Assembly: GCA_025558095.1 (NCBI GenBank)
Contig: JAIVFI010000022.1
Coordinates: 186,001 to 250,000 of the forward strand
Direction: 5' to 3'
From: Hyaloraphidium curvatum SAG 235-1
Taxonomy: Eukaryota > Fungi > Monoblepharomycota
DNA length: 64,000 nt
Of the stretch, positions 1,664-20,859 are shown one piece after another. Each line of letters opens with the position of its first letter. Position 1 is the stretch's first letter. A program made the translations under genes and the position numbers. The notes beneath the pieces are model-generated. The model was not told the DNA's origin, made no database searches, and saw nothing but the letters and a program-made list of their open reading frames with translations.

Positions 1664-3147
1664 TCACGAGCCCGGGCACACCGACTCGATCGTGAAGCTC
1701 ACCCCCGCCCCCCTGAGCACGCTCCACAGCGCCACCGACAGCGTCACGGTGGTCACCAAGAGCGTCTTTGCGAGCCCCCAGGTCACCACGATCCCCACGA
1801 AGGTCGCCCGCAGGTTGTCCGCGGCGCACAGGGACGTCAGCAGGACGACGTGTTCCCGAAGCTCTGCGGCAGCGGGCTGCCCGTGCACCCTTGCGGCCTC
1901 GGCGAGCATGGCCTGGAGCGCGGTGCGCGCATCGAGGTAGAGTGACCGGACGTCGTCGATCTGGTCGTTGGCGGCGGGAAGCTGCGCGAGGTCGACGCAG
2001 AGCTGGGCAAGGCTGATGAAGAGCCACAGGACGATCCAAAAGGGGATGCAGGAGCCCACGGCGACGTTGGCCGCGGCGCAAGCGGTCAGGACGAGGGGGC
2101 CGGCGACGGAATTCACCGTCGTGAAGGTGTTGTACGATATCGCGCTGACGGCCCGCGACGCCCGCCACCGCGATTCGTACGCCGTGTGCAGGGTGACGTA
2201 GAGCTCAGTGGTCCAGCTGTCCCCGACGGGCATGCCGTCCGCGAGGGCCGCGCGCGCGCGGGCGAGGAGTCGTGGAGGGCCAACCCGCTCGCGCGGCGGT
2301 AGATCCGGGTGCAGAGGCGCACGTCCGCGGGACTGAGCCGTGCAACGCGGATGAAGACGCCGAAGATGCTGAACGCAGCAACGGTGCAGACAAAGCACGT
2401 GCCCAGCAGTATGCCGTACCATCGTGACCAGAAGGCCGGGCCGAAGCGGACCAAGGGAGTCCACAAACAAAAGAACATGCCCGCAAGGCAGGCAGCTTGG
2501 AAAAAGCCGGGCCGGACGATACGGTCCCACAACGCCATGTTGAGGAGCCCGGAGCAGCAGGCACGGCACGTGCACTGCCGATCCCCCGGCACGTGTTCCA
2601 CGAGCTTCGATTGCGTCCCCGGGTCGCAGAGATCCAGCCACCGGCACATCTGCGAGAGGTTTGCTGCGAGAGCAGGTGCGTGACGTCTGGCCATGGCCTG
2701 CAACTTGCCAACCATGTACAAGACAATGGACATCGCCGTCAGGAAATGTAGGGCGATTGAGGCGACCCCGGTGGCCATCTGCCGGGTACTGAAGGTTCCA
2801 TCGTTGAGCGGAAATATCGTGGTGGCCGTTGCAATCTCCATGACGGCCGTGGCAACGATGCCAACTGTCACCATCGCGGGAATGGAGCCGGCGGCGCCGA
2901 GGACGCGCACGAGGCCCGCCAGCGCGCCCAGGCCCGCATCCTCCAGCCGCCTGACCACGTCGGACGGCGAGAGGAGGCCGCGCTCCGAGCCAGGGAACGC
3001 CTCGGGGTCGCCGCAACTTTTGGAGACATCGCCGCCGGCGAGGGAGCGCGGGAATGGGGCGGGCCCGTCCGCGGGCGCGGGGAAGGGGAAGACGGCCAGC
3101 AGATCCGCATCGTCCAGAAAATCGGGAAAGGCGTCGGTGGCCGCCAT
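1664..3147 (-). CDS. Putative 7TM gustatory-receptor-like (7TMIC/GRL) membrane protein, subfamily B; one frameshift near 2270
   Basis: ORF 2113..3147 gives the N-terminal TMs and a CTCRACC motif; ORF 1664..3016 gives the C-terminal TMs ending ATFVGIVVTWGLAKTLLVTTVTLSVALWSVLRG...ESVCPGS. One extra C at about 2270 (CAC GAC CTC CTC) joins the frames. Homologous to the other five copies. Confidence 0.65.
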
Positions 3148-3189
3148 GGCGAGGCGGGCGGAGGCAGTTCGACCGCTACGGGCGGCAGT

Positions 3190-3440
3190 GAAGAATCTTC
3201 GAAGAATCCATCAGGAAATCCTTCGAGTCCATCCAGAGACATCCCGAATCACCTCGAGGCTCCCAGATGCTCGAGATGCTACCAGAATCCGAGAAGACAA
3301 ATCTGGTGACATCCAGATGCAGCTCTTGGAGAGCACTTCATCCAGATGCCCCCCTGGGACATGCCTCCGTTTGAGATGTCGCCAGGGTCCGCGGTCCGGA
3401 TACAGATGCTGCCGCAGGCGGCGCCGGAGGTCTCGATGCT
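3190..3440. promoter_or_regulatory. Phased array of (A)GATG(C/T)/GAATC motifs upstream of the subfamily-B membrane gene
   Basis: AGATG at about 3265, 3274, 3315, 3344, 3374 and 3404, and CGATG at 3434. Spacing is about 30 bp in the distal part. Lies directly 5' of the ATG at 3147. Confidence 0.35.
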
Positions 3441-4599
3441 CCCGGACTCGTACAGCCATACCAGTGTTGAAACCCGTGTATTCAGCTCCACCTGGCACGT
3501 ACACTCGATGCCAACTTGTTCTATAGCCACTCCCCATCGCCTCGGCAGGCCGCGCTGTCGCCGTTGGTCGCCGTCCGCCCAGGAGCCGAACACTGAGGTC
3601 GCGGTTCGGGTCAGCAGATGAGCAAACGAGAACCCGGCGCCACGTACCTGATGATGCTGGCGACTATGAGCGAGCCTGCGGGGAAGGGAAGGAGGGAGCG
3701 GTGCGGATCAGCGAAGAGGGGACGGCGCAAGGCACCCACCCGGAGAGCTCCCCAAGACGAGGACCTGAGGGGGGAGAAGAGGAAACACGTGTCAGAAGCA
3801 CGCTTAAGCGAGGTCAGTAGCGGCGGGAGCGGCGGACATGCAGCGAGTGCGAGGAACTCGGGAACGGTTCGGCAGCAGTACCGGCGCGCCGGGGTCCCCG
3901 CCACGCGACGGATCACGGCAGCGAAATTAAGAGCGCGGAAGACGCGTTGCCGTGGGCGGCCCGGCGCGGAGACTCGGTCGAGGTTGCCCGGTCGATGCCT
4001 GAATTCTGTGTCGGTGGGGTTGATCACTCGATCTGATCACGCTCGGACCTTTCGCCGACGGAAGTGGCACAACGAGATCTTGGCTGAACAAATACAAGTA
4101 CAGTGCTTGCTCCTATTTCTACTGGGTGTCGTCTTCCTCCTCGCCGGCCTCGATCCGGGCCTGCCTCTCTGCGGCCTCCAGCTTCTCCACATCTTCAGCT
4201 CCGACGTTAGCCCACCTCCCGCGCGTTATCGCCTTGCGGCTTATGGCCTCCGCGAAGACGATGGCCGAGATGATGTCGAGGGCTTGCTTGATGATCGGCT
4301 TGGCATTTCCCCATCAAGTCGAGCTAATTGTTTCCGGGCCCGTCAGATGGCCAAGGGGATGTGACGAATGGACAAGGCCGAGGTCATCCTGCGACGCCAG
4401 GAGTTCGGGTCCGGCAAGATCTCCCGCAAACGCGGCTTCGGGGCCAAGTGCAAACACATCTCCATCTCGACGAACGCGCGCTTGACGGACGCCATCAGAA
4501 ACTACTTGGACGACAAGGTCCGCGGCTTTTCGGGCAGGCGAAAGAAGAAGAAGCGACCGAAGCTTCAGCGGCCGGAGGTGAGCCCAAAAGATCGGTTTG

Positions 4600-5095
4600 C
4601 AATGCTCTGATATACTCACAACGCGCTCCAGGTGGTGCCATATCGAACGCTGCACCTGGTTCGCGAGGATGCCGGGACTTTGGTCAAGGACACGCTCCAC
4701 GTCACGGACATGTTTTCATGGCGCTCGGCGCCAAGACTGCGTGCTCTTCCGGACTCCACGACGCCAGGGCATGGAGCTGGGCTCCACCGAGCTGTGCGTC
4801 GGCCGCATGGAGCTGCTCTTCAATGGCGACTTCGAGGACACCGCCGGCGTGGTTCGGACTTTGCACTTCGTGGCGTTGCGCCGCCACACCGTCCTCCGCG
4901 ACCGGACTCTGGAGGCTGCAAAGAGACTACTCGACGTCGGGCTTGATGGTGGTGGAGCTCAGCGCGGTCGTTCGGAGCGCGTATTTGATCCCCGACTTCG
5001 CGGTGCCCGTGGACAAGCAGGGCCGGCAAACTGCCTTCTATCTTGCGAGGCACATCGACTACGATATGTTCAAGCTTATTCCAGATGCCAAATAG
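4600..5095 (+). pseudogene. Degenerate ankyrin-like gene fragment
   Basis: Fragments in different frames resemble ankyrin helices (TLHFVAL...EAAKRLLDVG; DKQGRQTAFYLA). No coherent gene model. Confidence 0.2.
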
Positions 5096-5479
5096 AGCTT
5101 TGCTATTGTCTCGGCCCAGTCGGAGCGAAGACTCGGGAGCCCGACGGCGCGCCCCGTCTGCACCGGCACTTCACGCGCCGCGGAGTGCTTCCACCCGAAG
5201 GCGAACGATGTCGAAAGACGTGTACTAGGCCGGCAAGCTCGACGACTCGTCCGTGTTGTCTGCAGGACGCGGTGGTGGGCCGCCGAATGCTCCGCCCGCC
5301 AAGTCCGCGCCCCGCGACATCGCGCACGACCCAGAAGACAGTGCGCGCTCCTGGCCCCCCTCTGGTAGCATCTAGGTGGCCTGGAAGAACGGGTGGCCCT
5401 CTTCTGGACGCGTTGGGATGGTCACAATTGATACAGAAGCTTTGGGATGCCAGCAGATGCCGAGACCAGTTTCCTGATG

Positions 5480-5758
5480 TCAGCCCGCGCGCTTCCGAGC
5501 CAAGGTCTCGTCGCGCAGACGACTTCCCGCGCCATCCGATCTCTAGAACCCGGCGACATCTCGGATTCGAAAGATGAAAGATGGTCGAACAAACTGCTTA
5601 TCCTGGTTCGTGGATCCATGGGACCCTGCCTGCCTGCGGGACAATGTCGCTCGAGAGGAAGCTGCCTGGCTGGCTGGGCGTCGGCCGAAGTGCCGAAGTT
5701 CGTTTGAACGGCAAGCCTGGACGACGGATCGGCACGAGGGCCCGCAGACCGCAGAGCC
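5480..5758 (+). promoter_or_regulatory. Conserved upstream region shared by subfamily-A membrane genes
   Basis: Near-identical in reverse complement to about 15017-15260 (e.g. AAAGATGGTCGAACAAACTGCTTATCCTGGTT...GGGACAATGTCGCTCGAGAGGAAGCTGCCTGGCTGGCTGGGC). More diverged similarity to about 7610-7829. Confidence 0.6.
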
Positions 5759-7412
5759 ATGTCGCAGGAAGAGGACGCAGCGAAACCCGACGCGTCGTGC
5801 GGCCCGGAGACCCGCGCCCGGCGGCAGTTCCAACCGTTCACGCCTGAGGAGCTGGCCGCGCTCCTGCCGCTGAAGCCGCCCCCGCCGCCGCCGGCATTCT
5901 TCCCGGGCGACGACGATGCCTCGGACGACATCGAGAAGCTGTTGCGGCCACCGGATCCCGCTGCGGACGCGCGGGCGGCAGACCCCGGCCTGCGCGTTTT
6001 GGCACCCTTCCCGGGCCTCGCACTGTTCACGCGGATCCAGGGGTCTCTGGTGCCCTTGACTGCCTTCAGCGTGCCAATGTTTTGGCTGTGCGCGGCGGGC
6101 GTCGCCGCCGGTCTCGCGGTCGCTCTGGTGTTCCTCGCCCCGGCCGGGATCGCCCGCCAGAACCTGGCGATCGGGTTCGTATTCCCGGTCGTGCACATGC
6201 TCCTGGGAGGGGTTTTCAACGCCCAGTTGGCAGTTGGTCGCGGATTTACCTGGCAGGCGGCGCTGTGCTGGCCTCGGTCGCGCACACTCGTGCAGGCCAG
6301 ACTCGCGTTCGCCCGGGCCGGGTTTTTCGCCGACCGCTTGGCAGGGTTCCATCGGTGGATCGCCCTCTCCGGGGCAGGGTCAGGCGATGATGAAGCTCCT
6401 GGCGATTGCGAACCGGATTTCGTGCGCCATCTTGACAGGGACCCCATGTGCCCGTGTCCCCGGAAATCTTGTTCCGGGACCCTGCCACGAAATGCGCTTA
6501 CCCAGCGCGTGCTCCTGGTCGGTTCCCACACCCTACTATTCATGTTCTGCTTCCTCAGCATCCTTTGGACCCCCATCGTCACGCTCGCCGGCGGCACCTG
6601 GTCCAACGCGTGGTCGGGCACGGTGGTGACCCTGGGCCTCTGTGCCACGGTACCGCTCGTCCTCTGTCGTTTTCCCCTCCTCGTGGTGACATCCTCCGGC
6701 ATGCTCGCCACCTCGCGGCTTCGCCACCGTGCCATTGCCCTGTGTTTGGAATGCACCCTGCGAAGCTGCGCGGACGTGCTGCGTGGAGGCCCGGGTATGG
6801 ACGGTGCGGACGAGTACGCCCAGCTCGGCCCCCGTATCTGGGGGCAGGTGCGTGCCAGCGTCAGCCTCGTCAGTCTCCAGCCGAGAAACATCGCCCGTAG
6901 CATTCCCCTGCTCCTGGTCTACGGCGTGGCCAACGCAGTGAGTCCAAAATGACCGCACCGCCGGCGGGCCTTCCTGACCGCGCGGCCCATTGCAGATGGT
7001 CGGCCGCTGCGTTCCGGCATGGATCGTCGTCTACCTGGCCTGGTACCTCCTCACCCTCTTCCACGAGCTCTGGGTCGCCACCTTGATCAACGCCGAAGCC
7101 ACCGACTCGGCGTCGCAGTACGCCGCGGCCGCCTCGACCCTGAAGCGGCTGCTCCTCGCCGCGCACCCCGCATCCGGTCCCACGGCACCCTCAGGTGCCG
7201 TGGACCACGTGCGGGCGCACGCGGCGGCGCTGGAGACGCTGGCCGGTTCGGCGGCCGAGGGGGGGCGCAAGGCCAGGATCCTGGGGTTCGAGATCACGTT
7301 CGGGAGCATTCGGACGCTGTACGCCACGATCGCCACGGTCGCTTTCGCGGTGTGGGGGTTGCTCCGGGGCCTGGGCGTGGGCGTGCAAATGGAGAGCTTC
7401 TGCGGTGTCTGA
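5759..7412 (+). CDS. Putative 7TM gustatory-receptor-like (7TMIC/GRL) membrane protein, subfamily A copy 1 (about 531 aa, 2 exons)
   Basis: Exon 1 5759-6937, intron GTGAGT...CTGAC...GCAG 6938-6995, exon 2 6996-7412 in phase 0. About seven hydrophobic segments; C-terminus ARILGFEITFGSIRTLYATIATVAFAVWGLLRG. Confidence 0.75.
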
Positions 7413-7829: not shown

Positions 7830-9486
7830 ATGTCGCTTGAAGAAGACGCAGCGAAGCCCGACGCTTCGGGCGGCCCGGACGCCCGAGGCCAGCGGCACTT
7901 CCAGCCCCTCATGGCGGACGAGATGGCCGCGCTCCTGCCGCTGAAGCCGCCCCCGCCGCCTCCTTCCTTCTTTGCGGAACGCGGCGACGATGCCTCGGAC
8001 GATCTCGAGAAGCTCCTGCGGCCGCCGGACACCGCAGCCGGCGCGCGGGCGGCGGACCCCGGCCTCGGCGTCCTGGCGCCCTTCCCGGGCCTGGAACTGT
8101 TCACCCGCGCACAAGCTGCTGTCATGTCGTTCTTTGCTTTGTTCATCGTGCCGATCCTCTGGTCGTGCGCGGCCGGCGTCGCTGCCAGTCTCGGGGTCGC
8201 CCTGGTCTTCCTCCTCCCGGACGGGACCCCGCCGCAAAGCCTGGCCGTCGGGTTCATTTTCCCCGTCGCGCATATCCTGCTGGCCGGTTTTCTGAACGCG
8301 CAGGTATTCGTCGCCATTGGATTTCCTTGGGCAGCGGCGCTGTTCTGGCCCTGCTCGCGGGACCTGGTGCCGACAAAACTAGCGTTCGCCCAGGGCCCGT
8401 TGTTCGCCGACAGGTTGGCAGGCTTCCATCGGTGGATCGCTCTTTCCGGCGCTGGACTCGTCGACAATGAGGCAACGACCTCCGATTACCCACGGGATCT
8501 TTTGCGCCATTTTGACGGGGACCCCATGTGCCCGTGCGCCAGAACATCCTGCTCAGGGACCCTGCCGCGAAGTGCGCTGACCCAACGCGTGCTTTTGGTC
8601 GTTTCACATACCTCTTTCTTCATGTTTTGCTACTTCACCATCCTTTGGACCCCCATCGTCACCCTTGCCAGCGACACCTGGTCCAACGCGTGGTCGGGCG
8701 CAATTGTGGCCCTGACCTTGTGTGCCACGGCCGCACTGGCCCTCTGCCGCGTACCGCATCTCACGGTGACCAGTTCCGTCATCCTGGCGACCTCGCGCCT
8801 GCGCCACCGCGCCATCGCGCTGTGCCTGGAATGCACCCTGCGCAGTTGCGCCGACGTGCTTCGGGGTGGCCCTGGGATCGACGGCGCGGACGAGTACGCG
8901 CTGCTCGGCACACGGCTGTGGGAGCAGGTGCGCGCCAACGTCGGCTACGCCAGCATCCACCCCAGGAACATCGCACGGCTCATGCCGCCGCTGCTTCTCT
9001 ACGGGGTCGTGAATGCGGTGGGTCCCAACGGCCTCGCTGATGGGCCTCGGTAACCTCACGCACAATCAGATCGTTGGCCGCTGCGTGCCGGCCTGGATCG
9101 TCGTCTACCTGGCCTGGTACCTCCTCACCCTGTTCCAGGAGCTCTGGGTCGCCGCCCTGACCAACGCCGAGGCCGCTGACTCGGCGTCACAGTACGCCGA
9201 AGCTGCTTCGGCGCTCAAGCAGCTTCTCCTCGCCGCGCACCCCGCAACCGGCCCCACGGCAGCCCCGGCCGCCGTCGAGCACGTGCGCGCGCATGCGGCA
9301 GAGCTGGAGACGCTGGCGGGGTCGGCGGCAGACGGGGGACGCAAGGCCAGGATCCTCGGGTTTGAGATCACTTTCGGGAGCATACGCACGTTGTATGCCA
9401 CGATCGCCACGGTGGCGTTCGCGGTATGGGGGCTGCTTCGGGGGCTCGGCGTGGACGTGCAGATGGAGAGCTTCTGCGGTGTTTGA
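7830..9486 (+). CDS. Putative 7TM GRL-like membrane protein, subfamily A copy 2 (about 534 aa, 2 exons)
   Basis: Tandem paralog of 5759-7412 with an intron at the same position (9018-9069, GTGGGT...CAG) and a nearly identical last exon. Confidence 0.75.
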
Positions 9487-10913: not shown

Positions 10914-12836
10914 TCACTTTTTCGCCCACGGACTCCCGCTGTACGGCCCCGCCTTCTTCTTCCCCTTGGCCTCTTCCGTCTTTGCCTCCTCCTTCTTCTC
11001 CTCCACCTTCTCCTCCTTGGCAGGTGCCTCATCTCCCCCCCCGAGCAGCGTCGCCGGCCCGTCCGCCCCGCCCATCATCTCCTCCACCGCGTCCGCGGAC
11101 GACGCCAGCGCGGCGTCGGCCTTGGCCTTTGCCTGCGCCAGCGAGTGCCTGGCGTCGGCCGCGAGCTCCCCTGCGCGGGAGGCGAGGTGCTTCGCTTCCT
11201 CCGCCACGCTCGACGCCGCCTTGCCCGCATCCGCAGCGACCTCCTCCGATCCCGCGACCAGATCCTTGGCCATCTCGACCGCCCCCTCCACCGCCTCCTC
11301 CACCTTCTTCGCGATCCCCGCGGCGGCGTCGCCGGCGGCCTCGGCTGCATCAGCGGCCCCGCGCACCGCCTCGCCCGCCGACTTGACCGCCGATGCGAGC
11401 CCCTCCCCCGCGTCCTCGACGGCGTCCTTGGCGAGCGCGACGGCGCCGGCGGCCGCCGCGGCGGCGCGGTCTAGCAGGGACGGCCCGTCCTTCTCGGGCG
11501 CGGGCTCCGACCTGGCGGGGGCGGGCGCGACCCTGGCCGGCTTGGCCGGTTCCGACTTGGCCGGCTTAGGCTTGGGCGCAGACGCCGCGAGCGCCTCGCC
11601 CACGGCCTTCTCGCCCGGCCCCGCCGCCAGCCTGCCCTCGGCGCGCGCAAGGTGGTCGCCCGGGGCGTCCTTGCCCTTGTCCGTCTTGGCTGCCGGCACG
11701 GGGCCGGGTGATGCGGCGGGAGCAGGGGCGGGGGCGGAGGCGGCGAGCGCGGAAAGGTTGGAGGCCGCGAGGAGGGTGGCTTCGTCCTTGGCCTTTTTCT
11801 GTTGAGGCGAAGGGCGATCAGCGACAACGAATGGGGAAAGGGATAGACAACTCACCTCAGCTTCGCGGCGTGCTTCCGCGGCGGCGCGCGCCTCGATGAC
11901 CGCTTTCTCGGCCGCCTCCTCCTCGGCCTTGAGCCTCTCCAGCTCCGCCTCGCGCTCCTTGACCCTCCTCTTGCGCTCCTCCAGCTCCCTCTCCCTCTGC
12001 TCCTTCCTCGCCTCCTTCCTCTTTTTCCACCACTCGCTCTCGGGGATCATCCAGTACAGGCACAGCGCGGCCAGGCTGCCCAGCCACGCCCGCAGGTTGG
12101 CGTACCACCCCGGCGCCGCGCCCAGGCGGACCATGTACATGTCGGCGGCCAGCATGCCCGCGTGCGATGCGGAGAGGAGGTACAGCGCGGGGGAGGTGGG
12201 GAGGGAGGTGGCGAACCAGGCGACGAGGGATGGGACGACGGAGAGGGTGAAGAGGGCGCCCGGGGAGGTCGGGTTGCTGAGTAGGTCCCGGGGGAGGAGG
12301 TTGGACCAGATGGTGGGGGGCGGGGCGGTTTGCGGGGAGGGCTCGTCCTCGGCGGGTGCGGCCGGGGGCTCGTCGGCGGCGGGGGCGCCGCCAAAGGTCT
12401 TTGCCATAGCGAGGCCCCAGTACGGCCCGCCGAGGAAGGTCAGGATGACGGCGCCGTAGCCGATCCCCAGCTGCCGCCACACGTCTGCGGAGCCCGACAG
12501 CGCGGCACACGCTGCAAAGGGCAGCAGCCCCGCGACGCCGAGGATGCGCGCCTCGGCGGGCACGCCGCGCATCGAGAGGATGCTGGCGAGCGAGAAGGAG
12601 CCGGGGCCCGTGGCGGGCAGCGGCGCGGGCGGCTCCGGCTGAGAGAGGAAGAAGGAGAAGCCCGACGCGGCGCGGCGGGCGGGCGGAGGCGGGCTGCGGC
12701 GCGGCGCGGGGCGCGGGGGAAGATGCAGCGCCGACCGCGCCATCGCGGCCATCGGCGGCGCGGAGAGGCCAAAGGCCGGCCGGCGGGCGGCCAGCGGCGC
12801 AGGACGCGCGCGGACGAGTGCGGAGGACGCCCACAT
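10914..12836 (-). CDS. DUF3429/TMEM69-family mitochondrial membrane protein with coiled-coil and Ala-rich (LEA-like) C-terminal tail
   Basis: LGVAGLLPF and YGAVILTFLGGPYWGLAM motifs; Arg/Ala-rich targeting-like N-terminus; probable in-frame intron 11799-11855. Confidence 0.75.
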   Translation of the reverse strand: MWASSALVRARPAPLAARRPAFGLSAPPMAAMARSALHLPPRPAPRRSPPPPARRAASGFSFFLSQPEPPAPLPATGPGSFSLASILSMRGVPAEARILGVAGLLPFAACAALSGSADVWRQLGIGYGAVILTFLGGPYWGLAMAKTFGGAPAADEPPAAPAEDEPSPQTAPPPTIWSNLLPRDLLSNPTSPGALFTLSVVPSLVAWFATSLPTSPALYLLSASHAGMLAADMYMVRLGAAPGWYANLRAWLGSLAALCLYWMIPESEWWKKRKEARKEQRERELEERKRRVKEREAELERLKAEEEAAEKAVIEARAAAEARREAEVSCLSLSPFVVADRPSPQQKKAKDEATLLAASNLSALAASAPAPAPAASPGPVPAAKTDKGKDAPGDHLARAEGRLAAGPGEKAVGEALAASAPKPKPAKSEPAKPARVAPAPARSEPAPEKDGPSLLDRAAAAAAGAVALAKDAVEDAGEGLASAVKSAGEAVRGAADAAEAAGDAAAGIAKKVEEAVEGAVEMAKDLVAGSEEVAADAGKAASSVAEEAKHLASRAGELAADARHSLAQAKAKADAALASSADAVEEMMGGADGPATLLGGGDEAPAKEEKVEEKKEEAKTEEAKGKKKAGPYSGSPWAKK

Positions 12837-13370: not shown

Positions 13371-15016
13371 TTAAACGCCGCAGAAGCTCTCCATCCGCAC
13401 GTCCACGCCGAGCCCCCGGAGCAACCCCCACACCGCAAACGCCACCGTGGCAATCGTGGCGTACAACGTCCGAATGCTCCCGAAGGTGATCTCAAACCCC
13501 AGGATCCTGGCCTTGCGACCGCCCTCGGCCGCCGACCCCGCCAGCGTCTCCAGCGCCGCCGCGTGCGCCCGCACGTGTTCGACGGCACGCGAAGGTGCCG
13601 TGGGACCGGATGCGGGGTGCGCGGCGAGGAGCAGCCGCTTGAGGGCCGAGGCGGCCTGGGCGTACTGCGACGCCGAGTCGGCGGCTTCGGCGTTGATCAG
13701 GGCGGCGACCCAGAGCTCGTGGAAGAGGGTAAGGAGGTACCACGCGAGGTACACGACGATCCAGGCGGGAACACAGCGGCCCACTATCTGTATGAGGGGC
13801 ACGCAGTCACGGAGGGCGGACCATGCGGCGACTTTTGGACCCACCGCGTTCACCACGCCGTAGACCACGAGCGCGGGAAAGAGCCGGGCGATGTTCCTCG
13901 GCTGGAGACTGACGAGGGTGATGCTAGCCTTCACCTGCTCCCAGATCCGCGGCCGAGCAGGGCGTACTCGTCCACACCGTCCATGCCCGGGCCGCCACGC
14001 AGCACGTCCGCGCAGCTTCGGAGGGTGCATTCCAAACACAGGGCAATGGCGCGGTGGCGAAGCCGCGAGGTGGAGAGCATGCCAGAGGATGTCACCGCGA
14101 GGAGGGGCAGGCGACAGAGGATTAGCGGTACGGTGGCACACAGGCCCAGGGCCACCACCGCGCCCGACCACGCGTTGGACCACGTGTCGGCGGCTAGGGT
14201 GACGATGGGGGTCCAAAGAATGCTGACGAAGCAGAACATGAAGAGGAGCGAGTGCGAAACGACGACGAGCAGACGTTGCCCCAGGGCGCTCCCAGGGAGT
14301 TTACCGGCGCAAGCCTTCCTGGCGCAGGGGCACATGGGGTCCCCGGCAAAGTGGCGCACGAGATCCCGCTGGCCATGGTCAGCGGCTTCATCGTCGACGG
14401 TCCCGACACCAGAAAGAGCGATCCACCGATGAAAGCCCGCCAATCTGTTTGCGAACCACGGGCCCTGGGCGATCGCTAGCCTGGCCTGTACGAGGCTGCG
14501 CGACCGGGGCCAGCAAAGTGCCTCTGCCCACGACGATCCACGAATGACGTGGCCTTCAGCTTGGAAAATCCCGACAACCAGCATGTGCGCGACAGGGAAA
14601 GCGAACCCAACAGCAAGGCTCGCCGTCGGGCTCCCGTCCGCGACCAGGAATACCAAGGCGACCGCGAGGCCGGCGGCGATGCCGGCAGTGCAAATCCAAG
14701 CCAAGGTCACATTGAACGCCATCAACGGCGTTATAGAACCCTGCACTCGGGTGAACAGCTCCAAGCCCGGGAAGGGCGCCAGCACGCCGAGGCCGGGGTC
14801 CGCCGCCCGCGCGCCGGCCGCGGTGTCCGGCGGCCGCAGGAGCTTCTCGAGGTCGTCCGAAGCCTCGTCGTCGCCCGGGAAGAATGCCGGCGGCGGCGGG
14901 GGCGGCTTCAGCGGCAGGAGCGCGGCCAGCTCGTCCGCCGTGAAGGGCTGGAAGTGCCGCCGGGCGCGCGTTTCCGGGCCGCCCTCGACGGGCTTTGCTG
15001 CGTTCTCCTGCGACAT
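13371..15016 (-). CDS. Putative 7TM GRL-like membrane protein, subfamily A copy 3; one frameshift near 13950
   Basis: Inverted paralog of copies 1 and 2; conserved intron 13788-13844. One base is missing at G-P-R-I-W (GGCCGCGGATCTGG), splitting ORFs 13931..15175 and 13371..14216. Confidence 0.7.
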
Positions 15017-15269
15017 GGCTCTGCGGTCTCGGGCCCTCGTGCCGATCCGTCGTCCAGGCTTGCCGTTCAAACGAACTGCGGCCCAGCCAGCCAGGCAGCT
15101 TCCTCTCGAGCGACATTGTCCCGCAGGCAGGGTCCCATGGATCCGAGAACCAGGATAAGCAGTTTGTTCGACCATCTTTCGAATCCGATATGCTCCAGGT
15201 TCCAGAGATCGGATGGCTGGGGATGTCGTCTGGCGGGCGACGAGGCCTTGGCGCGGAGCGGGCGGTTGG

Positions 15270-15851
15270 AACGCAGACAGCGAGCCCGTCGGCGACCGCT
15301 GGACAACTGAGGTCTACGTCACTCTGCACACGGCGTACGAACAGCGGTGGCGCGCGGCCCGCGCCGTAACCGCGCTCTCCTACAACAGCTTCACAACGGT
15401 GACTTCCGTCGCCACCCCCCTCGTCCTGACCACGTGCGCCGTGGCCAACGTCGCCGTGGGCTCCTGCATTCCCTTATGGATCATCGTCTGGCTCCTCGTC
15501 ACCCTCAGCCGGCTCTACATCGACCTCGCGCAGCTCCCGGCGGCCAACGACCAGATTGACAGCATCCTCTCCCTCTACCTCGACGCCCGGACTGCACTCC
15601 AGGCCATGCTCACCCAGGCCGCGCGGGTGCAAGGGCAACCCGCCGCCGCTGAGCTGCGCGAACACGTCGTCCTGCTGACCTCCTTTTGCGCCGCTGACAA
15701 CCTGCGGGCAACCTTCGTGGGGATCGTGGTGACCTGGGGCTTGGCAAAGACGCTGCTGGCGACCACCGTGACGCTCTCGGTGGCGCTTTGGAGCGTGCTC
15801 AGGGGGGCGGGGATGAGCTTCACGATCGAGTCGGTCTGTCCGAGCTATTGA
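15270..15851 (+). pseudogene. 5'-truncated copy of the subfamily-B membrane gene
   Basis: PVGDRWTTEVYVTLHTAYEQRWRAARAV...ESVCPSY is highly similar to 1664-2240 (minus) but lacks the N-terminal ~290 aa. It is fused directly to the upstream region of copy 3. Confidence 0.75.
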
Positions 15852-16035
15852 GAAGGGAGGGAGGGACGCTTGCTGATGAAGGACTGGGACGCCTGGCACG
15901 CCAACAAGCAAGATATATTTCGTAACGTTGAAGAGCATCATCGCATGCCGTGCACGACGGATTCGACTGAATGGGATTCGCGTCCCCGCCCGTCTCAGAG
16001 CCCAACTCGAAACCTTAGACCTTCCCCGCCCCGCG

Positions 16036-16944
16036 ATGGCCGAGGACCGGCATCTCCAACGCCTCGAATTTCAGGTGGACTCCTATCAGAAGTTCCTGGC
16101 CGGGCTCGAGAACCCGACGGAGGAGCAGCTCGCGGAGTTCAGCAAAAGGATGGCGGCGCTGGACGCGTACCGGGACGGCCGAACGGGCACCGGGCCGGCG
16201 GTCAAGGCCGAACCCGGGACAGAGAATCATGGGACGCGGGCGGCAAACGGGGAAGGCGCGGGTTCGGCGGGCGGGGAGTCCGCGGGGGGTGCGGGAGCGG
16301 GGTCTGCCGGCGACGGGCCGAGGAACGCGAGGAAAATGAGGGTCACCGGTGGGCTCTTTTCGGGCGCTCAGTCGGGAGCTTCCTGGGTTATTGATCCCCG
16401 CGTGTTGCCATAGTCCGCCCCCAGTCCAGCTCGCACCAGGAAGTCAGTGGGTGCCATCGCTTGCTACGGAACCGACCGCCTTCCAATACCGCTGCCCAGC
16501 GTTCGTCGTCAAGGCCTCCTCCAAGTTCTCCAAGATCTTCGTACGATCTCCCTCCCGCTCCCACGCCGTCGGGCACTGACCTGTTCGCCCGCGCGCCAGG
16601 AGGAGTACGAGAGGAAGTGCAATGCGGTGTGCCCGTCGCCACGCCGGCCGAACGGTAGCGTTGACCGGCTCCTTTGCCTTTTGTCAGGCATCGGGTGTGT
16701 TCAGGTATCACTACGACGGCGCAAGACTCCGCAAGGACCAGACTGTGGGCGAGGTGGGCCCCGTTCGCGCCTCTCCGCCGGCCCAGGCGCCTACGACGCT
16801 GATTGCCGCTCTTCCGCATCAGATAGAGCCGGATGACGACGGTAGGTCCGCTGCTGAAGGCGCCGCAGCGCGGCTACTCAATTCTGCGTCGAAGAAATGG
16901 TCGTCGACGCCTTCCAGGAGGCGGCGGTGGGGGGTCGTTGCTGA
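16036..16944 (+). CDS. Divergent SUMO-like ubiquitin-fold protein with ~100-aa N-terminal extension (7 exons)
   Basis: Splicing six GT-AG introns (about 16349-16413, 16448-16499, 16541-16599, 16628-16687, 16754-16822, 16842-16893) yields ...MRVTVRPQSSSHQEVTFVVKASSKFSKIFEEYERKCNAASGVFRYHYDGARLRKDQTVGEIEPDDDEMVVDAFQEAAVGGRC*, colinear with SUMO and ending GG-RC. Confidence 0.8.
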
Positions 16945-17138
16945 AGACGTGGTGCGAGCATAAGCATCGCGCGCCGTTCCACATCGCCTTCTGAAGCAGC
17001 ATGGTTGGTAGTCAGTGTTAGAGCACTAGCGAGGCGGGGAGCGCGGCTGGTTCAGGGTGGAGCTGTGCATTCTTTGCGGCGGGGCCATGGCGGTATGGGT
17101 GAGAAAGCCACTATACCGACCGCCGCGAAAACCAAACC

Positions 17139-17949
17139 ATGCAGCCCACTCTCGCGCCTTCGAGCGCCTCCGTTGAGCGGCCCCGCTTCCGCTTCGCCGC
17201 TCCCCTGTTCTTCGGCGCGGACAGCGCGCCGCCGACGCCGCACGGACCGCTCACGGCGTTCGTGTCGAGCCTCCGCGGGCCCGTCGCGCGACTCGTCGTC
17301 GGCCCAGAGAAGGTCAATCTTCACGTGCACAAGGAACTCGCGTGCCGTGTGCCGTTCCTGCGCGCCGCGCTCGACGGCGAGTTCGCTGAGGCCGCGAGCG
17401 GGGTGGTCGAGCTGCCTCACAAGCAGCCCGGAGGCGGTCGGGCCGCTGGTCGAGTACCTCTACACCCGCAGGCTGAACGTCACGCCCTGGAACGAGTTCG
17501 ATCGAAAGCTCGCGTACGCCAAGGTCCGCGTGCTTGCGGGGAAGTGGGCGTTCGACGAGTTGGAGGAGATTGCCCTCTCGTTCGCCACGGGTAAAATGCT
17601 GCGGTTCTCGGTTCCCTCCGCTGTGGACGCGTCGAGGGACAAGATGCTGCGAAAGGAACACGAGATGAAGCACCTCGCGTACCTAAAGGAGATCTACCAG
17701 ATCAGCCCGTCTGGCTCCATGCTTCGTATCCCCGCTGAAGCGTCGTTCAAGGCCTGCGACCTGATCAGGGAACTGAAGGGGACCGAAGAGCTCGAGACCG
17801 CGATTGCAGAGGTGCCGGAGCTCGCTGTCGATCTCCTGTACCGTGCCGCACAGGAGGAGGAGGATGCCAAGAAGCCAACCAGCCCCGAAAGTGCCGAAGC
17901 AGCGGTTCCCAGGGACCGACCCGGGTTCGTTTTCCAGGTCCCGCGCTAA
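17139..17949 (+). CDS. BTB/POZ domain protein (paralog of 10090-10752); one frameshift near 17428
   Basis: LVVGPEKVNLHVHKELACRVPFLRAALDGEFAE in ORF 17139..17594 continues as EAVGPLVEYLY...LAGKWAFDEL in ORF 17005..17949. Extra C in CAGCCCGGAG. Confidence 0.8.
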
Positions 17950-18026
17950 GCGGACACCTATTGCGTACCCTCGGAACATCTGCGGGCCAATTAATCGGCC
18001 AGATAGACGCGCGAATCCTGTGTAAT

Positions 18027-19661
18027 CTAGTTATCAACCATCTCGGGGGTCATAACGATCACCGTCGGCTTCCCCTTCCCCCAGCACCCCCCGATCGCCC
18101 TCCCCAGCGCCTCCAGATCCCCCGGCCTCTCCGCATCGCACCCGAACCCCCTCGCCACGGCCTCGAAGTCCGGATTCCGCGCCCGCACCGCGTTGGGCTC
18201 GATCCCCTTGCGCACCATGTCGTCCCTGATCTCCCCGAGCGCTGAATTATCCCACACCAGCACCGCCAGGTCCATCCCGAGCTCGGCGGCGGTGGAGAGC
18301 TCGGGAAGCGTGTAGCCGAAGCCGTAGTCGCCCACCAGCACCGCCGCGGGGACGCCGGGGCGGGCGAGGGAGGCGCCAATGGCGGCGGGCAACGCAAAGC
18401 CGAGGGTGCCGAAGCCCACAGGGTGCAAGTACGTGCGGGGCGCGTAGACGGGGAAGATCTCGTTGGCGGCATAGGCGGGCTGGGTCATGTCGGTGGCGAG
18501 GATGCAGTCCTGCGGGAGGGCGGCGCGGATGGCCGCGAGAAGGTGGCGCATGATGCCGCGGAGGGGATCGTCGAAGGAGGGTTCGGTGTCGAGGTAGGTC
18601 TTGACGAGCTGGGCCGAGCGCTCGAAACGTTCTCCTGTGTCGAGGTGTGCGGGAAGGGCCGCTAGGATGGCGGAGAGCGCGGCTGAGGCGTCGGCGAGGA
18701 TGGCGACCTCGGCCGGGTAAGGGCGGGCCAGGACGGCGGGATCCAGGTCGATCCGGATCATGTGCTTGCCAAAAATCGGCGGCTCCGGGGAGTAAAAGTC
18801 CGTTTCCGCCAGCTCGCTCCCGACGACCAGCACGACGTCCGCCGATGAAAGCAGTTCGCGTGCAGCAGCCTGCGGCATGCGCGCACCAAGGCACAGGGGA
18901 TGATCCGAGGACACGACGCCCTTGCCGGCGACGGTCGTGAGCACGGGGCATCCCAGCCTGTCCACGAGCGCGACGGCCTGCGCGGATGCGTCCACGGCGC
19001 CTCCGCCAAAGACAATGATCGGCCGCTCGGCAGAGGAAAGCAAGGCGGCCGCCTCCTCGATAAGTCCCGGATCGGGAAACGCCCGTCGCGGCAGCGCTTG
19101 CTTCCGAAAGGCCGCCGTCTTGGCCCCCAGGACGTCGATGGGCAGCTCGATGTAGGCAGGCCGAGGCCGCGCGGCCTTCATCCCGGCAAAAGCAGCAGCC
19201 ACGGCCTGCTCGACGTCGGCCGGAGCCGTCGGGCCGAAAGAGTACTCGGTTACAGCGGCGGCCGCTCCCCTCTGGCTCCGCATCTCGTGCAGCCTGCCCC
19301 GTCCCTGCGCCGAATCGGCGATGTCCAGCGACGACGACAGCAGCAGCACCGGCGACGAGTCCGAGTACGCCTGCGCGAGCCCCGTCAGCGCGTTGAGGAC
19401 GCCCGGGCCCGTAATCGAAATCGCCACGCCCGGGCGGCCCGACGCGCGGGTAAAGCCATCCGCCATGAATGCCGCACCCTGCTCGTGCCGCGCGAGCACG
19501 TGCTTTATGCCCGACGCGGGCAGCGCCCGGTAGAGCTCCACATTGTGCACTCCGGGGATGCCGAACGCGTGCGTGACGCCGTAGTCGCGGAGCAGGTGGA
19601 CGAGGGCCTCCCCGACGGAGGAAGGTCCGTGAACGTCGGTGGACGCGTTGGAGTGCTCCAT
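18027..19661 (-). CDS. aruI: ThDP-dependent 2-oxoacid decarboxylase, 5-guanidino-2-oxopentanoate (2-ketoarginine) decarboxylase-like
   Basis: FGIPGVHNVELY, RHEQGAAFMADG, ITGPG, GRGRLHE, GFGTLGFALPAAIGA and the ThDP motif GDYG...WDN. Intronless, 544 aa. Substrate assignment is from family resemblance. Confidence 0.75.
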   Translation of the reverse strand: MEHSNASTDVHGPSSVGEALVHLLRDYGVTHAFGIPGVHNVELYRALPASGIKHVLARHEQGAAFMADGFTRASGRPGVAISITGPGVLNALTGLAQAYSDSSPVLLLSSSLDIADSAQGRGRLHEMRSQRGAAAAVTEYSFGPTAPADVEQAVAAAFAGMKAARPRPAYIELPIDVLGAKTAAFRKQALPRRAFPDPGLIEEAAALLSSAERPIIVFGGGAVDASAQAVALVDRLGCPVLTTVAGKGVVSSDHPLCLGARMPQAAARELLSSADVVLVVGSELAETDFYSPEPPIFGKHMIRIDLDPAVLARPYPAEVAILADASAALSAILAALPAHLDTGERFERSAQLVKTYLDTEPSFDDPLRGIMRHLLAAIRAALPQDCILATDMTQPAYAANEIFPVYAPRTYLHPVGFGTLGFALPAAIGASLARPGVPAAVLVGDYGFGYTLPELSTAAELGMDLAVLVWDNSALGEIRDDMVRKGIEPNAVRARNPDFEAVARGFGCDAERPGDLEALGRAIGGCWGKGKPTVIVMTPEMVDN

Positions 19662-19943
19662 CTTCGCGATTCGTGGTCGTCCTGCGACTGACTCGCGTCG
19701 CGTGTTTATGCGAGCCCGGCGCCTGCCGCCGCTTCTACAAATCTCCTTCCTAGTTCCTGCAGATTCAGGCTACACTGGAAGGTCCTCGAGCCCTGGCATT
19801 ATTGAGAGTAGCTAGATACCTCAATGCCGCGCCCGACGACAGAAACAAGCAAGCCGGCGGAGACCTATAGTCGCAGTCGCCGCTTCGTCCTGTATTCGCC
19901 TTGAACCCAGTTCAAAGTGCCAGGCAAGCAAGCCAGCCACTCC

Positions 19944-20859
19944 TCACGGTCCGGGACAGATGGTCTCGGGGGTAAACAAGACACCGAATCCGCGCATGAT
20001 CGACCACGCCGCCAGCGCAATAGTCAAGGTGGTCACCCCAATCGTCTCGACAGCACCAAAAGTGACTTCAAACCCCAAGAACGTCCCCATCTGCGACACG
20101 GAATCGGGTTGCGAGAAGGCTGCAAGCATGTCCCGATGCGCCAGAAGCGATAGCTTGATCTGTTCCGGTGGATTCCGCCCAATCAGCAGCAGCGTGCGGA
20201 CCCTGGCAGCGGCGAGCACGCGCGCGAGGTTGCGCACGCCAGCATTGGCACCGGCAATGGAAAGAAGGTCGTTGGCGAGAATAGATACCAAGAGAAGCAC
20301 CAACCCGAGCTGCCAGAGCGCGATGCACCCGGCTCCAGCGGCGTTGATGGCGGCCTCCAGAAGATACACGGCCAAGAGGGCCACCAGCACCGTTCGCCCG
20401 GCGGAGGCACCGGGGGCTTGGGAGGGCCAGGTTTCGGCGACGGATCGGTAAAGTGCAACGTAGGGTTCGTCGGACGGTTGGCAGACATTGTGCCGCGTTC
20501 CCGGTGCTTGCGGAGGCGGAACACGCCGCCGGCTTCCTCGTTGAGAATCCACGTGCAGCGACGATGGGAGCCCAGTAGATCGACTGAACCAGCATTCGCT
20601 GACCGGTGTAGCGGGCATATGGGTTCAGGGCCAGCCCGAGCCTCGCCAGCCGTTGCAGCGCGGGCCACGGTGCCAGCCCCGCAAGCAGGTCCCGGGGCTC
20701 GAGCAGCGCGTCCGCTGCGGGGTCTGCGGAGGATTTGGACTGTTTGGAGTCGCCCACACGCTCGGTTGCCGGCGGTCCTCCAGGGAACACCGCGAGCGTT
20801 TCGGCGCGCGTGAGTTGCAGCGGCGCCGGCGGCGTGTCGCTGCCCGGCGGCGGGTCCAT
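19944..20859 (-). pseudogene. Degenerate, internally deleted GRL-like membrane gene (third subfamily)
   Basis: The N-terminus (LAVFP...LLEPRDLLAGLAPWPAL) and QSIYWAPIV resemble the family. The C-terminus in another frame ends GTFLGFEVTFGAVETIGVTTLTIALAAWSIMRG...ETICPGP. About 300 codons versus about 500 in intact copies. Confidence 0.6.

What the first reader, a model, noticed from the sequence alone, without database searches (positions are those of the whole stretch)
1664..20859. Clustered, expanding family of putative gustatory/odorant-receptor-like 7TM ion channels in a fungus-like genome
Seen: six paralogs or relics in 19 kb (1664-3147, 5759-7412, 7830-9486, 13371-15016, 15270-15851, 19944-20859), forming three subfamilies. 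Intact copies are about 500-535 aa, lack a signal peptide and have about seven hydrophobic helices, with long loops after TM2 and TM4. A conserved 'A..N' follows TM6, and the conserved C-terminal segment is a hairpin plus helix (ILGFEITFGSIRTLYATIATVAFAVW / FVGIVVTWGLAKTLLVTTVTLSVALW / FLGFEVTFGAVETIGVTTLTIALAAW). Established: insect GR/OR receptors, eukaryotic GRLs (including chytrid homologs) and plant DUF3537 proteins share an inverted 7TM topology whose most conserved part is the split TM7 (G-F-x-[ILV]-[DT] hairpin then pore helix). Inference: this is a lineage-specific repertoire of ligand-gated chemosensory channels. The pore/anchor half is nearly invariant among subfamily A copies while TM1-TM4, the ligand-pocket side, diverges, as in insect receptor arrays.
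Basis: partly seen in the sequence, partly recalled or inferred. Interest (0 to 1): 0.9.

Follow-up and report, generated by a model that had tools for sequence, protein, structure and literature searches.

The report
Huge insect-receptor-like channel family in a fungus
The six gene copies belong to a family of at least about 240 (probably 300-500) membrane proteins, so far found only in the aquatic fungus Hyaloraphidium curvatum, whose predicted shape matches insect smell and taste receptor channels although no sequence search links them.

Summary
The window (Hyaloraphidium curvatum, contig C22) holds exactly six copies at the stated coordinates, in three subfamilies.

- **State of the copies:** only two are intact (5759-7412, 531 aa; 7830-9486, 534 aa). 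Two carry a single 1-nt frameshift, and two are truncated relics.
- **Expression:** transcript contigs cover copies 1 and 2 and confirm the 58-nt intron of copy 2.
- **Family size:** two searches of the organism's own genome gave 508 and 534 candidate loci. All 300 scored matches were significant, and I count about 240 distinct loci. A profile search of 1.84 billion proteins gave 461 hits, and all 20 I sampled were H. curvatum.
- **Sequence links:** Pfam and PDB sequence profiles find nothing.
- **Architecture:** seven TM helices, N-terminus inside by the positive-inside rule, long cytoplasmic loops, long TM4-6, and TM7 split by a beta-hairpin.
- **Conservation:** TM7b is the most conserved part (dN/dS 0.01-0.04) and TM1-TM2 the least (0.36-0.50).

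My reading is a new, sequence-orphan, massively expanded 7TMIC family. Channel and chemosensory function is inferred, and the tetramer test gave no verdict. Other first-stage readers noted the family elsewhere in this genome; nobody had followed it up.

The parts
1664..3147 (-). Copy 1 (subfamily B). It is full length but has a 1-nt deletion near 2270, in the cytoplasmic extension of TM4, that shifts the frame. It is transcribed. A possible 68-nt GT..AG interval (2284-2217) would restore the frame but is not spliced out in the transcript contig.
   Evidence: Two frames. tblastn frame switch. DNA alignment with the intact paralogs L071 and L072. A collinear RNA contig covers 1708-3196 with no differences from the genome.
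5759..6937 (+). Copy 2 (subfamily A), exon 1, 393 codons. It encodes the N-terminal cytoplasmic domain with the EELAALLP motif (5837-5869), TM1 to TM4, the His/Asp/Cys motif H-x3-D-x2-CPC-x4-C (6428-6472) in loop IL1, the WTP motif (6563-6583) and TM5.
   Evidence: Translation. RNA contig 5887-6937 joined to 6996. Helix mapping from alignment A2 and model m415e1b5ee238.
6938..6995 (+). 58-nt GT..AG intron of copy 2, in the TM5-TM6 extracellular loop. The position is conserved in copy 3 (9018-9069) and copy 4 (13788-13844).
   Evidence: Joint 6937 to 6996 in the transcript contig. GT/AG at the homologous sites.
6996..7412 (+). Copy 2, exon 2, 138 codons plus the stop. It encodes TM6 (7017-7163, with the near-invariant Asn in the LINAE stretch, 7077-7097), TM7a (7191-7250), the beta-hairpin (7251-7298), TM7b (7299-7370) and the C-terminal Cys tail (7392-7409). 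The spliced product is 531 aa.
7830..9486 (+). Copy 3 (subfamily A), intact: exon 1 7830-9017, intron 9018-9069, exon 2 9070-9486, giving 534 aa. The NCBI model DFJ74DRAFT_770267 (P0002, 458 aa) lacks a central segment and the end of TM7b.
13371..15016 (-). Copy 4 (subfamily A). A 1-nt deletion near 13951 breaks the frame, and the intron lies at 13788-13844. Apart from the deletion, both frames stay open, so it is a recent pseudogene or an assembly error.
15213..15851 (+). Copy 5 (subfamily B). Only the C-terminal half is present (TM5-TM7, homology from about 15276). It is 84% identical to copy 1 in the last 140 aa and is a truncated relic.
19944..20859 (-). Copy 6 (subfamily C). It is a relic with an internal deletion of about 190 aa (TM2-TM4). 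The N-terminal part lies at 20838-20509 and the C-terminal part at 20480-19950.

Best explanation
The six loci are members, pseudogenes and relics of a very large gene family of Hyaloraphidium curvatum (Monoblepharidomycetes). At least about 240 loci are verified, and the total is probably 300-500.

The proteins are about 480-550 aa long and have the fold of the 7TM ion-channel (7TMIC) superfamily that includes insect odorant and gustatory receptors:
- the N-terminus is in the cytoplasm;
- there are seven TM helices;
- the extracellular loops are very short;
- three long cytoplasmic loops and long extensions of TM4, TM5 and TM6 form a helical 'anchor' bundle together with TM7a;
- a beta-hairpin separates TM7a from TM7b, the most conserved segment.

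Shown: the copies, their state, transcription, the family size, purifying selection with a TM7b-conserved and TM1-TM2-variable gradient, and the fold match.

Inferred:
- Subunits assemble through the anchor bundle into tetramers, with the Thr-rich TM7b lining a central cation pore.
- The variable TM1-TM4 half forms a ligand pocket, so the repertoire acts as ligand-gated sensory channels.
- The near-invariant H-x3-D-x2-CPC-x4-C motif in cytoplasmic loop IL1 binds a metal such as zinc.
- Two near-invariant extracellular Cys, one in the TM5-TM6 loop and one in the C-terminal tail, form a disulfide.
- The family evolves by tandem and dispersed duplication with frequent gene death.

My odds are about 0.8 for membership of the 7TMIC fold superfamily and about 0.45 for ligand-gated sensory channel function.
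For: - **Organism:**
- **Copies:**
- **Family size:** 508 and 534 first-look loci, with 150 + 150 scored, all at E <= 2.5e-12 and E <= 3e-17. There are 461 profile hits among 1.84 billion representatives, 297 of them at E <= 1e-30. All 20 sampled are single-member H. curvatum clusters.
- **Models:** pLDDT 89.8 with pTM 0.88, and pLDDT 86.0 with pTM 0.87. They come from paralogs only 27% identical and from different alignments.
- **Foldseek:** the top 7 and top 9 PDB hits are OR/GR, with probability up to 0.98.
- **Topology:** the long loops each carry 7.9-11.1 K+R, the short loops 0.3-0.9.
- **Split TM7 with hairpin** in both models.
- **Selection in subfamily A:** dN/dS 0.26 for exon 1 (copy 2 vs copy 3), 0.09-0.11 for exon 2, 0.01-0.04 for the hairpin plus TM7b, and 0.36-0.50 for TM1-TM2.
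- **Family-wide identity:** 44% in TM7b against 15-21% in the membrane parts of TM1-TM5.
- **Transcription and splicing:**
Against: - No sequence-level link exists. Pfam 7tm_6, 7tm_7 and DUF3537 give no hit even at E <= 10 in 43 members, and the family profile finds no OR/GR among PDB sequences.
- Foldseek E-values are 0.06-0.3 and TM-scores 0.28-0.43, below the usual 0.5.
- The animal GRL TM7 motif is absent.
- The tetramer prediction gave no verdict.
- H. curvatum lacks flagellated zoospores (my own knowledge), so a role in chemotaxis is not obvious.
- No functional data of any kind exist.
- The models are of intronless paralogs, not of the window's own spliced proteins.
Confidence: 0.6

Rival explanations
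1. The proteins have the 7TMIC fold and are homologous, but they are not chemoreceptors. They could be channels or scaffolds of internal membranes, sensors of intracellular signals acting through the large cytoplasmic bundle and the His/Cys motif, or a diversifying self/non-self or defence-type repertoire.
For: - Most non-insect 7TMICs have no known function, and the authors who named the superfamily say channel activity is unproven for most of them (PMC9998090).
- The extracellular loops are minimal, while more than half of the protein is cytoplasmic.
- The organism is a non-motile plankter (my own knowledge).
- Large birth-and-death families are also typical of recognition and immune genes.
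Against: - In insect ORs the ligand pocket lies inside the TM bundle, so short loops do not argue against ligand sensing (established knowledge).
- The variable part here is the membrane-embedded TM1-TM5, and the conserved part is TM7b, the same gradient as in insect receptor families.
Confidence: 0.25
2. The resemblance is convergent. This would be an unrelated seven-helix membrane family whose long helices happen to superimpose on OR/GR structures.
For: - There is no detectable sequence similarity.
- Foldseek TM-scores are below 0.5.
Against: - In two independent models, out of 48,161 chains every match of more than 300 aligned residues is an OR, Orco or GR, and each aligns in the same order along both chains over 82-96% of the chain.
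- The rare hallmarks all co-occur: N-terminus inside, short extracellular loops, long TM4-6, and TM7a-hairpin-TM7b.
- Accepted 7TMIC members such as PHTF score in the same range.
Confidence: 0.1
3. The family is selfish or decaying repeat DNA, for example an ORF carried by a mobile element, with no function for the cell.
For: There are hundreds of dispersed copies, and four of the six copies in this window are broken or truncated.
Against: - Copies are only about 25% identical on average, far too diverged for an active repeat.
- Purifying selection is clear, with dN/dS 0.09-0.26 at dS 0.3-0.7.
- No transposase or other element domains were found, and the neighbours are ordinary genes.
- The genes are transcribed and correctly spliced.
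- The predicted fold is confident and membrane-embedded.
Confidence: 0.03

Closest known systems
Insect odorant receptors and Orco (MhOR5 7LIC/7LID, AaegOR10 8V00/8V02, AgamOR28 8V3C/8V3D, A. pisum OR5-Orco 8Z9A/8Z9Z, Orco 6C70)
   Different: - There is no sequence similarity (6-11% identity in the structural alignments) and no Pfam 7tm_6 hit.
- The proteins are about 100-150 aa longer, with a longer four-helix cytoplasmic bundle and an 80-aa IL1 that carries a His/Asp/Cys motif.
- They have a conserved N-terminal E-W-x-A-L-[LF]-P motif and a conserved extracellular Cys pair.
- No co-receptor-like conserved member has been identified.
- They occur in a fungus.
Insect gustatory receptors (BmGr9 8VC1/8VC2/8UVT, Gr43a 8JM9/8X84, Gr64a 8JME)
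   Different: There is no Pfam 7tm_7 or Trehalose_recp hit. The TM7 motif (T/S)Y-h5-(Q/K/E)(F/L/M) is absent; the family consensus of TM7b is R-T-x2-V-T-x2-T-V-x2-G-L-W.
Chytrid GRLs (SpunGRL1 and SpalGRL1 of Spizellomyces; Benton et al. 2020, PMC7746228)
   Same: These are the only fungal 7TMICs described by sequence. They also come from a zoosporic-lineage fungus, and they too keep only a remnant of the TM7 motif.
   Different: Each species has a single gene, against hundreds here. Those proteins were detectable by sequence search with GRLs, whereas this family is not.
PHTF / Class-B eukaryotic 7TMICs (Benton & Himmel 2023; Himmel et al. 2023 preprint)
   Different: PHTF genes are single-copy or low-copy and conserved, not expanded repertoires. 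No Pfam hit to the PHTF domain was found. Placement in Class A or Class B could not be tested, because neither AlphaFold DB nor PHTF models were available.
Plant DUF3537 proteins
   Same: They belong to the 7TMIC superfamily, have long intracellular loops, and have an unrecognisable TM7 motif.
   Different: They form small families of 4-12 genes. No PF12056 hit was found.

Membership tests
7TMIC superfamily (criteria of Benton & Himmel 2023 and Himmel et al. 2023) | Seven transmembrane helices | tested here: met
   The family-mean hydropathy profile shows seven TM segments. Both AF2 models have seven membrane-length helices, with TM7 split.
7TMIC superfamily (criteria of Benton & Himmel 2023 and Himmel et al. 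2023) | [quoted passage not shown] | tested here: met
   Positive-inside rule: the N-terminus and the three long loops carry 7.9-11.1 K+R each, while the short loops and the C-terminal tail carry 0.3-0.9. The models superimpose on ORs in the same N-to-C order. DeepTMHMM was not available.
7TMIC superfamily (criteria of Benton & Himmel 2023 and Himmel et al. 2023) | Intracellular loops longer than extracellular loops | tested here: met
   IL1 is about 84 aa, IL2 about 102 aa and IL3 about 82 aa. EL1 and EL2 are about 9-10 aa, the TM5-TM6 turn (EL3) is only a few residues in L036 (variable in the family), and the C-terminal tail is 8 aa.
7TMIC superfamily (criteria of Benton & Himmel 2023 and Himmel et al. 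2023) | Long TM4, TM5 and TM6 projecting into the cytoplasm (anchor domain) | tested here: met
   Model 1 helices: 242-267 plus 272-306, 339-386 and 391-440. Model 2 helices: 276-300 plus 306-335, 346-392 and 418-466. Short PDB hits to four-helix bundles map onto this region.
7TMIC superfamily (criteria of Benton & Himmel 2023 and Himmel et al. 2023) | TM7 split into cytoplasmic TM7a and membrane TM7b | tested here: met
   Model 1: helix 448-474, two short strands at about 479-484, helix 487-510. Model 2: helix 476-494, two short strands at about 500-505, helix 508-531.
7TMIC superfamily (criteria of Benton & Himmel 2023 and Himmel et al. 2023) | TM-score of 0.5 or more to a known member | tested here: inconclusive
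   Foldseek TM-scores are 0.28-0.43 normalised by target. The ESM Atlas search found two unnamed cnidarian clusters at 0.60 and 0.51 normalised by target. TM-align on the trimmed core was not possible.
7TMIC superfamily (criteria of Benton & Himmel 2023 and Himmel et al. 2023) | Homotetramer or heterotetramer with TM7b lining the pore | tested here: inconclusive
   Complex prediction with four copies of residues 339-524 gave no verdict. The chain's own fold was uncertain, and the alignment was not used.
7TMIC superfamily (criteria of Benton & Himmel 2023 and Himmel et al. 2023) | Ligand-gated cation conductance | not testable with these tools
   This needs electrophysiology of expressed proteins.
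Animal Gr/GRL and insect Or families (Pfam 7tm_7, 7tm_6, Trehalose_recp) | Match to the family HMM | tested here: not met
   No hit at E <= 1 for the window pieces and none at E <= 10 for 43 members. The family profile finds no OR/GR chain among PDB sequences.
Animal Gr/GRL and insect Or families (Pfam 7tm_7, 7tm_6, Trehalose_recp) | TM7 motif (T/S)Y-h5-(Q/K/E)(F/L/M) | tested here: not met
   The consensus of 139 sequences in TM7b has no conserved Tyr or the terminal polar/aromatic pair. The motif definition comes from PMC7746228.
Plant DUF3537 (PF12056) | Match to the family HMM | tested here: not met
PHTF-like Class-B 7TMICs | Sequence or structural clustering with PHTF | not testable with these tools
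   No Pfam hit to the PHTF domain. No PHTF structure exists in the PDB, and AlphaFold DB was not on hand. A long IL1 is a shared trait only.
G-protein-coupled receptors | N-terminus outside the cell and a GPCR helix bundle | tested here: not met
   The positive-inside rule gives an inside N-terminus. No GPCR appears among the listed matches of either model.

The most novel reading that the evidence does not exclude
Hyaloraphidium curvatum, a non-flagellate planktonic fungus, carries the largest 7TMIC repertoire known outside animals. Several hundred ligand-gated sensory channels would have expanded independently of insect ORs and GRs, with the same division of labour (conserved TM7b pore, variable TM1-TM4 pocket). 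They would add a fungal-specific cytoplasmic metal-binding His/Cys module and an N-terminal motif that couple the channel to intracellular partners.
Probability: 0.4. Interest if true: 0.9.

Novelty: new variant of a known kind. Interest (0 to 1): 0.8.

Why it matters
Outside animals, 7TMICs have been reported as single genes or small families. Fungi were represented by one GRL in each of two Spizellomyces species and by sparse structure-screen hits in chytrids and blastoclads. No paper I found links Hyaloraphidium to this superfamily.

A repertoire of hundreds of genes in a 32-Mb fungal genome would show that massive 'chemoreceptor-style' expansion of this fold is not an animal invention. It would give an independent natural experiment on which parts of the fold tolerate change. 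It would also raise the question of what a non-motile plankter senses with so many channels.

Many members are intronless and about 500 aa long, so they are convenient for expression and cryo-EM. That would make the long-standing question of whether non-insect 7TMICs are ion channels directly testable. The finding also shows that sequence-orphan paralog families can supply the co-variation that confident structure prediction needs.

Tried and rejected
- **Pfam:** scans of the window pieces and of 43 members gave only scattered chance hits.
- **PDB sequences:** the family profile gave only a chance Rop hit at E 0.52.
- **Word-indexed protein search, three tries:** an exon, alignment A1, and the region 385-524. 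All were swamped by common Ala/Leu/Pro-rich words and returned only 1-3 H. curvatum proteins. They say nothing about other species.
- **Metagenome scan:** The scan with the C-terminal alignment A3 matched 221 patterns but found no relative.
- **ESM Atlas feature search:** only unnamed, mostly prokaryotic clusters (top score 0.91; the commonest phylum is Heimdallarchaeota). The query's recognition value was low, so this is a lead only.
- **Tetramer:** Complex prediction with four copies of residues 339-524 gave no verdict, and I count it neither way.
- **Intron in copy 1:** I considered that its frame switch was an intron. A 68-nt GT..AG interval exists, but the transcript contig is collinear with the genome, and intact paralogs read straight through with one more base. 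I therefore read it as a frameshift.
- **Rejected readings:** a mobile-element origin and a GPCR reading (see the rival explanations and the membership test).
- I searched the exons separately by reference, and intronless paralogs (L036, L005) stood in for the structure predictions.

Full report
**Where and what**

The window is G000:C22:186001-250000 of a 31.9-Mb, 55-contig genome. A database match names the organism as Hyaloraphidium curvatum: NCBI hypothetical protein DFJ74DRAFT_770267 is the model of one of the copies. GC content is about 65% throughout.

**The observation**

tblastn with 36 full-length paralogs finds exactly six family loci in the 64 kb, all within the first 21 kb. The last 140 residues give three subfamilies:
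- A = copies at 5759, 7830 and 13371, 88-93% identical to each other;
- B = copies at 1664 and 15213, 84% identical;
- C = the copy at 19944;
- between subfamilies, identity is 31-40%.

The copies are interspersed with ordinary genes: a peptide deformylase, a DUF3429 protein and a ThDP enzyme. A further intact copy (L036, 524 aa) lies about 5 kb upstream of the window.

**Gene models**

The one public run that holds this DNA behaves as a transcriptome. Its contigs skip three short GT..AG (or CT..AC) intervals, and their depth varies about 100-fold.

| Copy | Structure | State |
|---|---|---|
| 2 | 5759-6937, 58-nt intron 6938-6995, 6996-7412 | intact, 531 aa; a contig joins 6937 to 6996 |
| 3 | 7830-9017, intron 9018-9069, 9070-9486 | intact, 534 aa; same intron position |
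| 4 | 13371-15016 (-), intron 13788-13844 | 1-nt deletion near 13951 relative to copies 2 and 3 |
| 1 | 1664-3147 (-) | changes frame near 2270 |
| 5 | 15213-15851 | C-terminal half only |
| 6 | 19944-20859 (-) | lacks about 190 central residues |

- In subfamily A the intron lies in the TM5-TM6 loop.
- For copy 1, the intact intronless paralogs L071 (514 aa) and L072 (502 aa) read straight through with one more base. A transcript contig covers 1708-3196 collinearly with no differences from the genome. Copy 1 is therefore a transcribed, recently frameshifted gene.
- Overall the window holds two intact genes, two very young pseudogenes and two relics, which is a birth-and-death pattern.
Exons were used separately by reference.

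**Family size and range**

- A search of the organism's own genome with the C-terminal exon of copy 2 gave 508 first-look candidates. All 150 scored matches had E <= 2.5e-12.
- The same search with the C-terminus of copy 1 gave 534 candidates, and all 150 scored had E <= 3e-17.
- By my reading of the two lists, they share about 60 loci, so roughly 240 distinct loci are verified. About half sit in single open frames of 480-600 aa.
- A profile of 43 sequences searched exhaustively against 1.84 billion cluster representatives found 461 proteins at E <= 1e-3, 414 at E <= 1e-10 and 297 at E <= 1e-30.
- All 20 that I looked up are single-member clusters named as H. curvatum hypothetical proteins.
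- The weakest hits could not be listed, so distant relatives in other species are not excluded.
- A metagenome scan with the subfamily-A C-terminus found nothing.

**Sequence features**

Alignments of 43 and 139 members show these conserved features:
- an N-terminal E-W-x-A-L-[LF]-P motif;
- H-x3-D-x2-CPC-x4-C in the loop after TM2, with His, Asp and the three Cys each present in at least 90% of sequences;
- W-T-P between TM3 and TM4;
- R-L-x2-R-A after TM4;
- N-x-A-x-G-x-C-x-P-A between TM5 and TM6;
- a near-invariant Asn at the cytoplasmic end of the membrane part of TM6;
- the C-terminal block [R/K]-F-x-G-F-x-V-x2-G-x2-R-T-x2-V-T-x2-T-V-x2-G-L-W-x2-L-R-G-x-G-V ... C-P.

Family-mean hydropathy gives seven TM segments. 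Loops of about 84, 102 and 82 aa follow TM2, TM4 and TM6, and the other loops are about 10 aa or less. K+R counts are 7.9-11.1 in the N-terminus and each long loop, against 0.3-0.9 in the short loops and the tail. This places the N-terminus and all long loops in the cytoplasm. No signal peptide is present.

**Fold**

- AlphaFold2, run without templates on L036 with the 43-row alignment, gave pLDDT 89.8 and pTM 0.88.
- On L005, which is 27% identical to L036 and is the closest intronless relative of subfamily A, with 139 rows it gave pLDDT 86.0 and pTM 0.87.
- Both models show TM1 to TM4, a cytoplasmic continuation of TM4, very long TM5 and TM6 helices (about 47-50 residues), a cytoplasmic helix (TM7a), two short strands forming a hairpin, and a final membrane helix (TM7b). 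A short strand in the C-terminal tail pairs with one in the TM5-TM6 loop.
- An all-against-all structural alignment with 48,161 PDB representatives ranked insect receptors first for both models (table below).
- Each receptor match aligns 306-349 residues in the same order along both chains, from about residue 45-80 to about residue 510-545 of the model.
- The only other hits of comparable Z are bundles of 210 residues or fewer (syntaxin, designed proteins and the like), nearly all aligned to the cytoplasmic helices.
- Foldseek independently puts ORs and GRs in the top 7 and top 9 places (probability up to 0.98), but with weak E-values (0.06-0.3) and TM-scores of 0.28-0.43.
- In the ESM Atlas the two nearest models are unnamed cnidarian clusters, with TM-scores of 0.60 and 0.51 normalised by target.

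|---|---|---|
| AaegOR10 | 13.2 | 13.5 |
| AgamOR28 | 12.5 | 12.7 |
| MhOR5 | 12.4 | 12.8 |
| A. pisum OR5-Orco complex, chain 8z9z_D | 11.5 | 12.4 |
| A. pisum OR5-Orco complex, chain 8z9a_A | 11.1 | 11.8 |
| BmGr9 | 10.5 | 10.5 |
| Gr43a | 10.2 | 10.8 |
| Gr64a | not listed | 9.8 |

Two points are from my own knowledge. The AlphaFold2 weights predate the first Orco structure, so the fold is unlikely to have been recalled from training. Butterwick et al. 2018 described a beta-hairpin between S7a and S7b of Orco.

Caveats:
- no TM-score to a known member reaches 0.5;
- the models are of paralogs, not of the window's own proteins.

**No sequence link**

Pfam gives nothing for the window pieces or for 43 members, even at E <= 10. 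The family profile finds no receptor among PDB sequences. The animal GRL TM7 motif is absent. Membership is therefore at the level of the fold superfamily only, and I do not file the family under Gr, Or, GRL or DUF3537. Whether it belongs to Class A or to the PHTF-like Class B of Himmel et al. could not be tested. A long IL1 is shared with PHTF.

**Selection**

Within subfamily A, dS is 0.3-0.8:

| Region | dN/dS | Amino-acid identity |
|---|---|---|
| Exon 1 (copy 2 vs copy 3) | 0.26 | 71% |
| Exon 2 | 0.09-0.11 | 88-93% |
| TM1-TM2 | 0.36-0.50 | 53-57% |
| Hairpin plus TM7b | 0.01-0.04 | 95-98% |

Across 135 full-length paralogs, mean pairwise identity is 44% in TM7b and 43% in the tail, against 15-21% in the membrane parts of TM1-TM5. 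It reflects selection rather than gene conversion, because synonymous sites in TM7b have diverged.

**Mechanism (inferred)**

By analogy with solved ORs and GRs:
- subunits would tetramerise through the cytoplasmic bundle (the TM4-6 extensions plus TM7a);
- TM7b, which carries Thr at i, i+4 and i+7, would line the central pore;
- the variable outer half of TM1-TM4/6 would form the ligand pocket;
- the His/Asp/Cys motif is cytoplasmic, so it more likely binds a metal than forms disulfides;
- the two near-invariant extracellular Cys lie next to the strands that pair in the models and may form a disulfide.

The only multimer test I could run gave no verdict.

**Literature**

No paper in the library links Hyaloraphidium with gustatory receptors or 7TMICs. 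Fungal 7TMICs described so far are one GRL in each of two Spizellomyces species and unspecified chytrid and blastoclad hits in a structure screen.

**Verdict**

This is a real, expressed and very large family, so far seen only in H. curvatum. It has the 7TMIC fold and novel sequence features. Its function as ligand-gated sensory channels is plausible but untested.

Noticed in passing
window 3207-5461: Strongly expressed gene(s) lie between copies 1 and 2, with word depth up to about 2100 against 45-118 for the receptor copies. Introns are at 3593-3647 (CT..AC, so minus strand) and 4576-4629 (GT..AG). The transcript contigs differ from the genome by several SNPs, a 6-nt deletion at 4716 and an 8-nt insertion after 4896, so they may come from an allele or a close paralog. 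Pfam finds nothing for the ORFs 3618-4361 and 4597-5574.
   Followed up: partly
window 7830-9486 (P0002): The NCBI gene model for copy 3 (DFJ74DRAFT_770267, 458 aa) omits about 95 residues, including the His/Cys motif and TM3, and replaces the end of TM7b with unrelated residues. It is probably mis-spliced. No database model was returned for copy 2. Counts of the family from annotated proteomes will therefore be unreliable.
   Followed up: partly
window 993-1574 (-): An intronless peptide deformylase ORF (Pfam Pep_deformylase, E 4e-45) lies directly next to copy 1.
   Followed up: no
window 18030-19661 (-) and 10917-12836 (-): A three-domain ThDP-dependent enzyme (TPP_enzyme_N, _M and _C) and a 640-aa ORF with DUF3429 lie between the receptor copies. 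These are ordinary neighbours with no mobile-element signature.
   Followed up: no
G000 C17:638874-639272 / C47:84343-84741, C17:659815-660213 / C47:105286-105684, C30:61802-62185 / C48:17351-17734: Pairs of family loci on different contigs have identical scores and spacing. This suggests that the small contigs C47 and C48 are alternative haplotypes or duplicated assembly pieces of C17 and C30, which would slightly inflate the locus counts.
   Followed up: no
L036 protein (C22, about 5 kb upstream of the window): In the ESM Atlas feature search, the nearest cluster (score 0.91) is an unnamed 455-aa family whose commonest labelled phylum is Heimdallarchaeota. Himmel et al. report eukaryote-like 7TMICs in that group. 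The query's recognition value was low, so this is only a lead.
   Followed up: no
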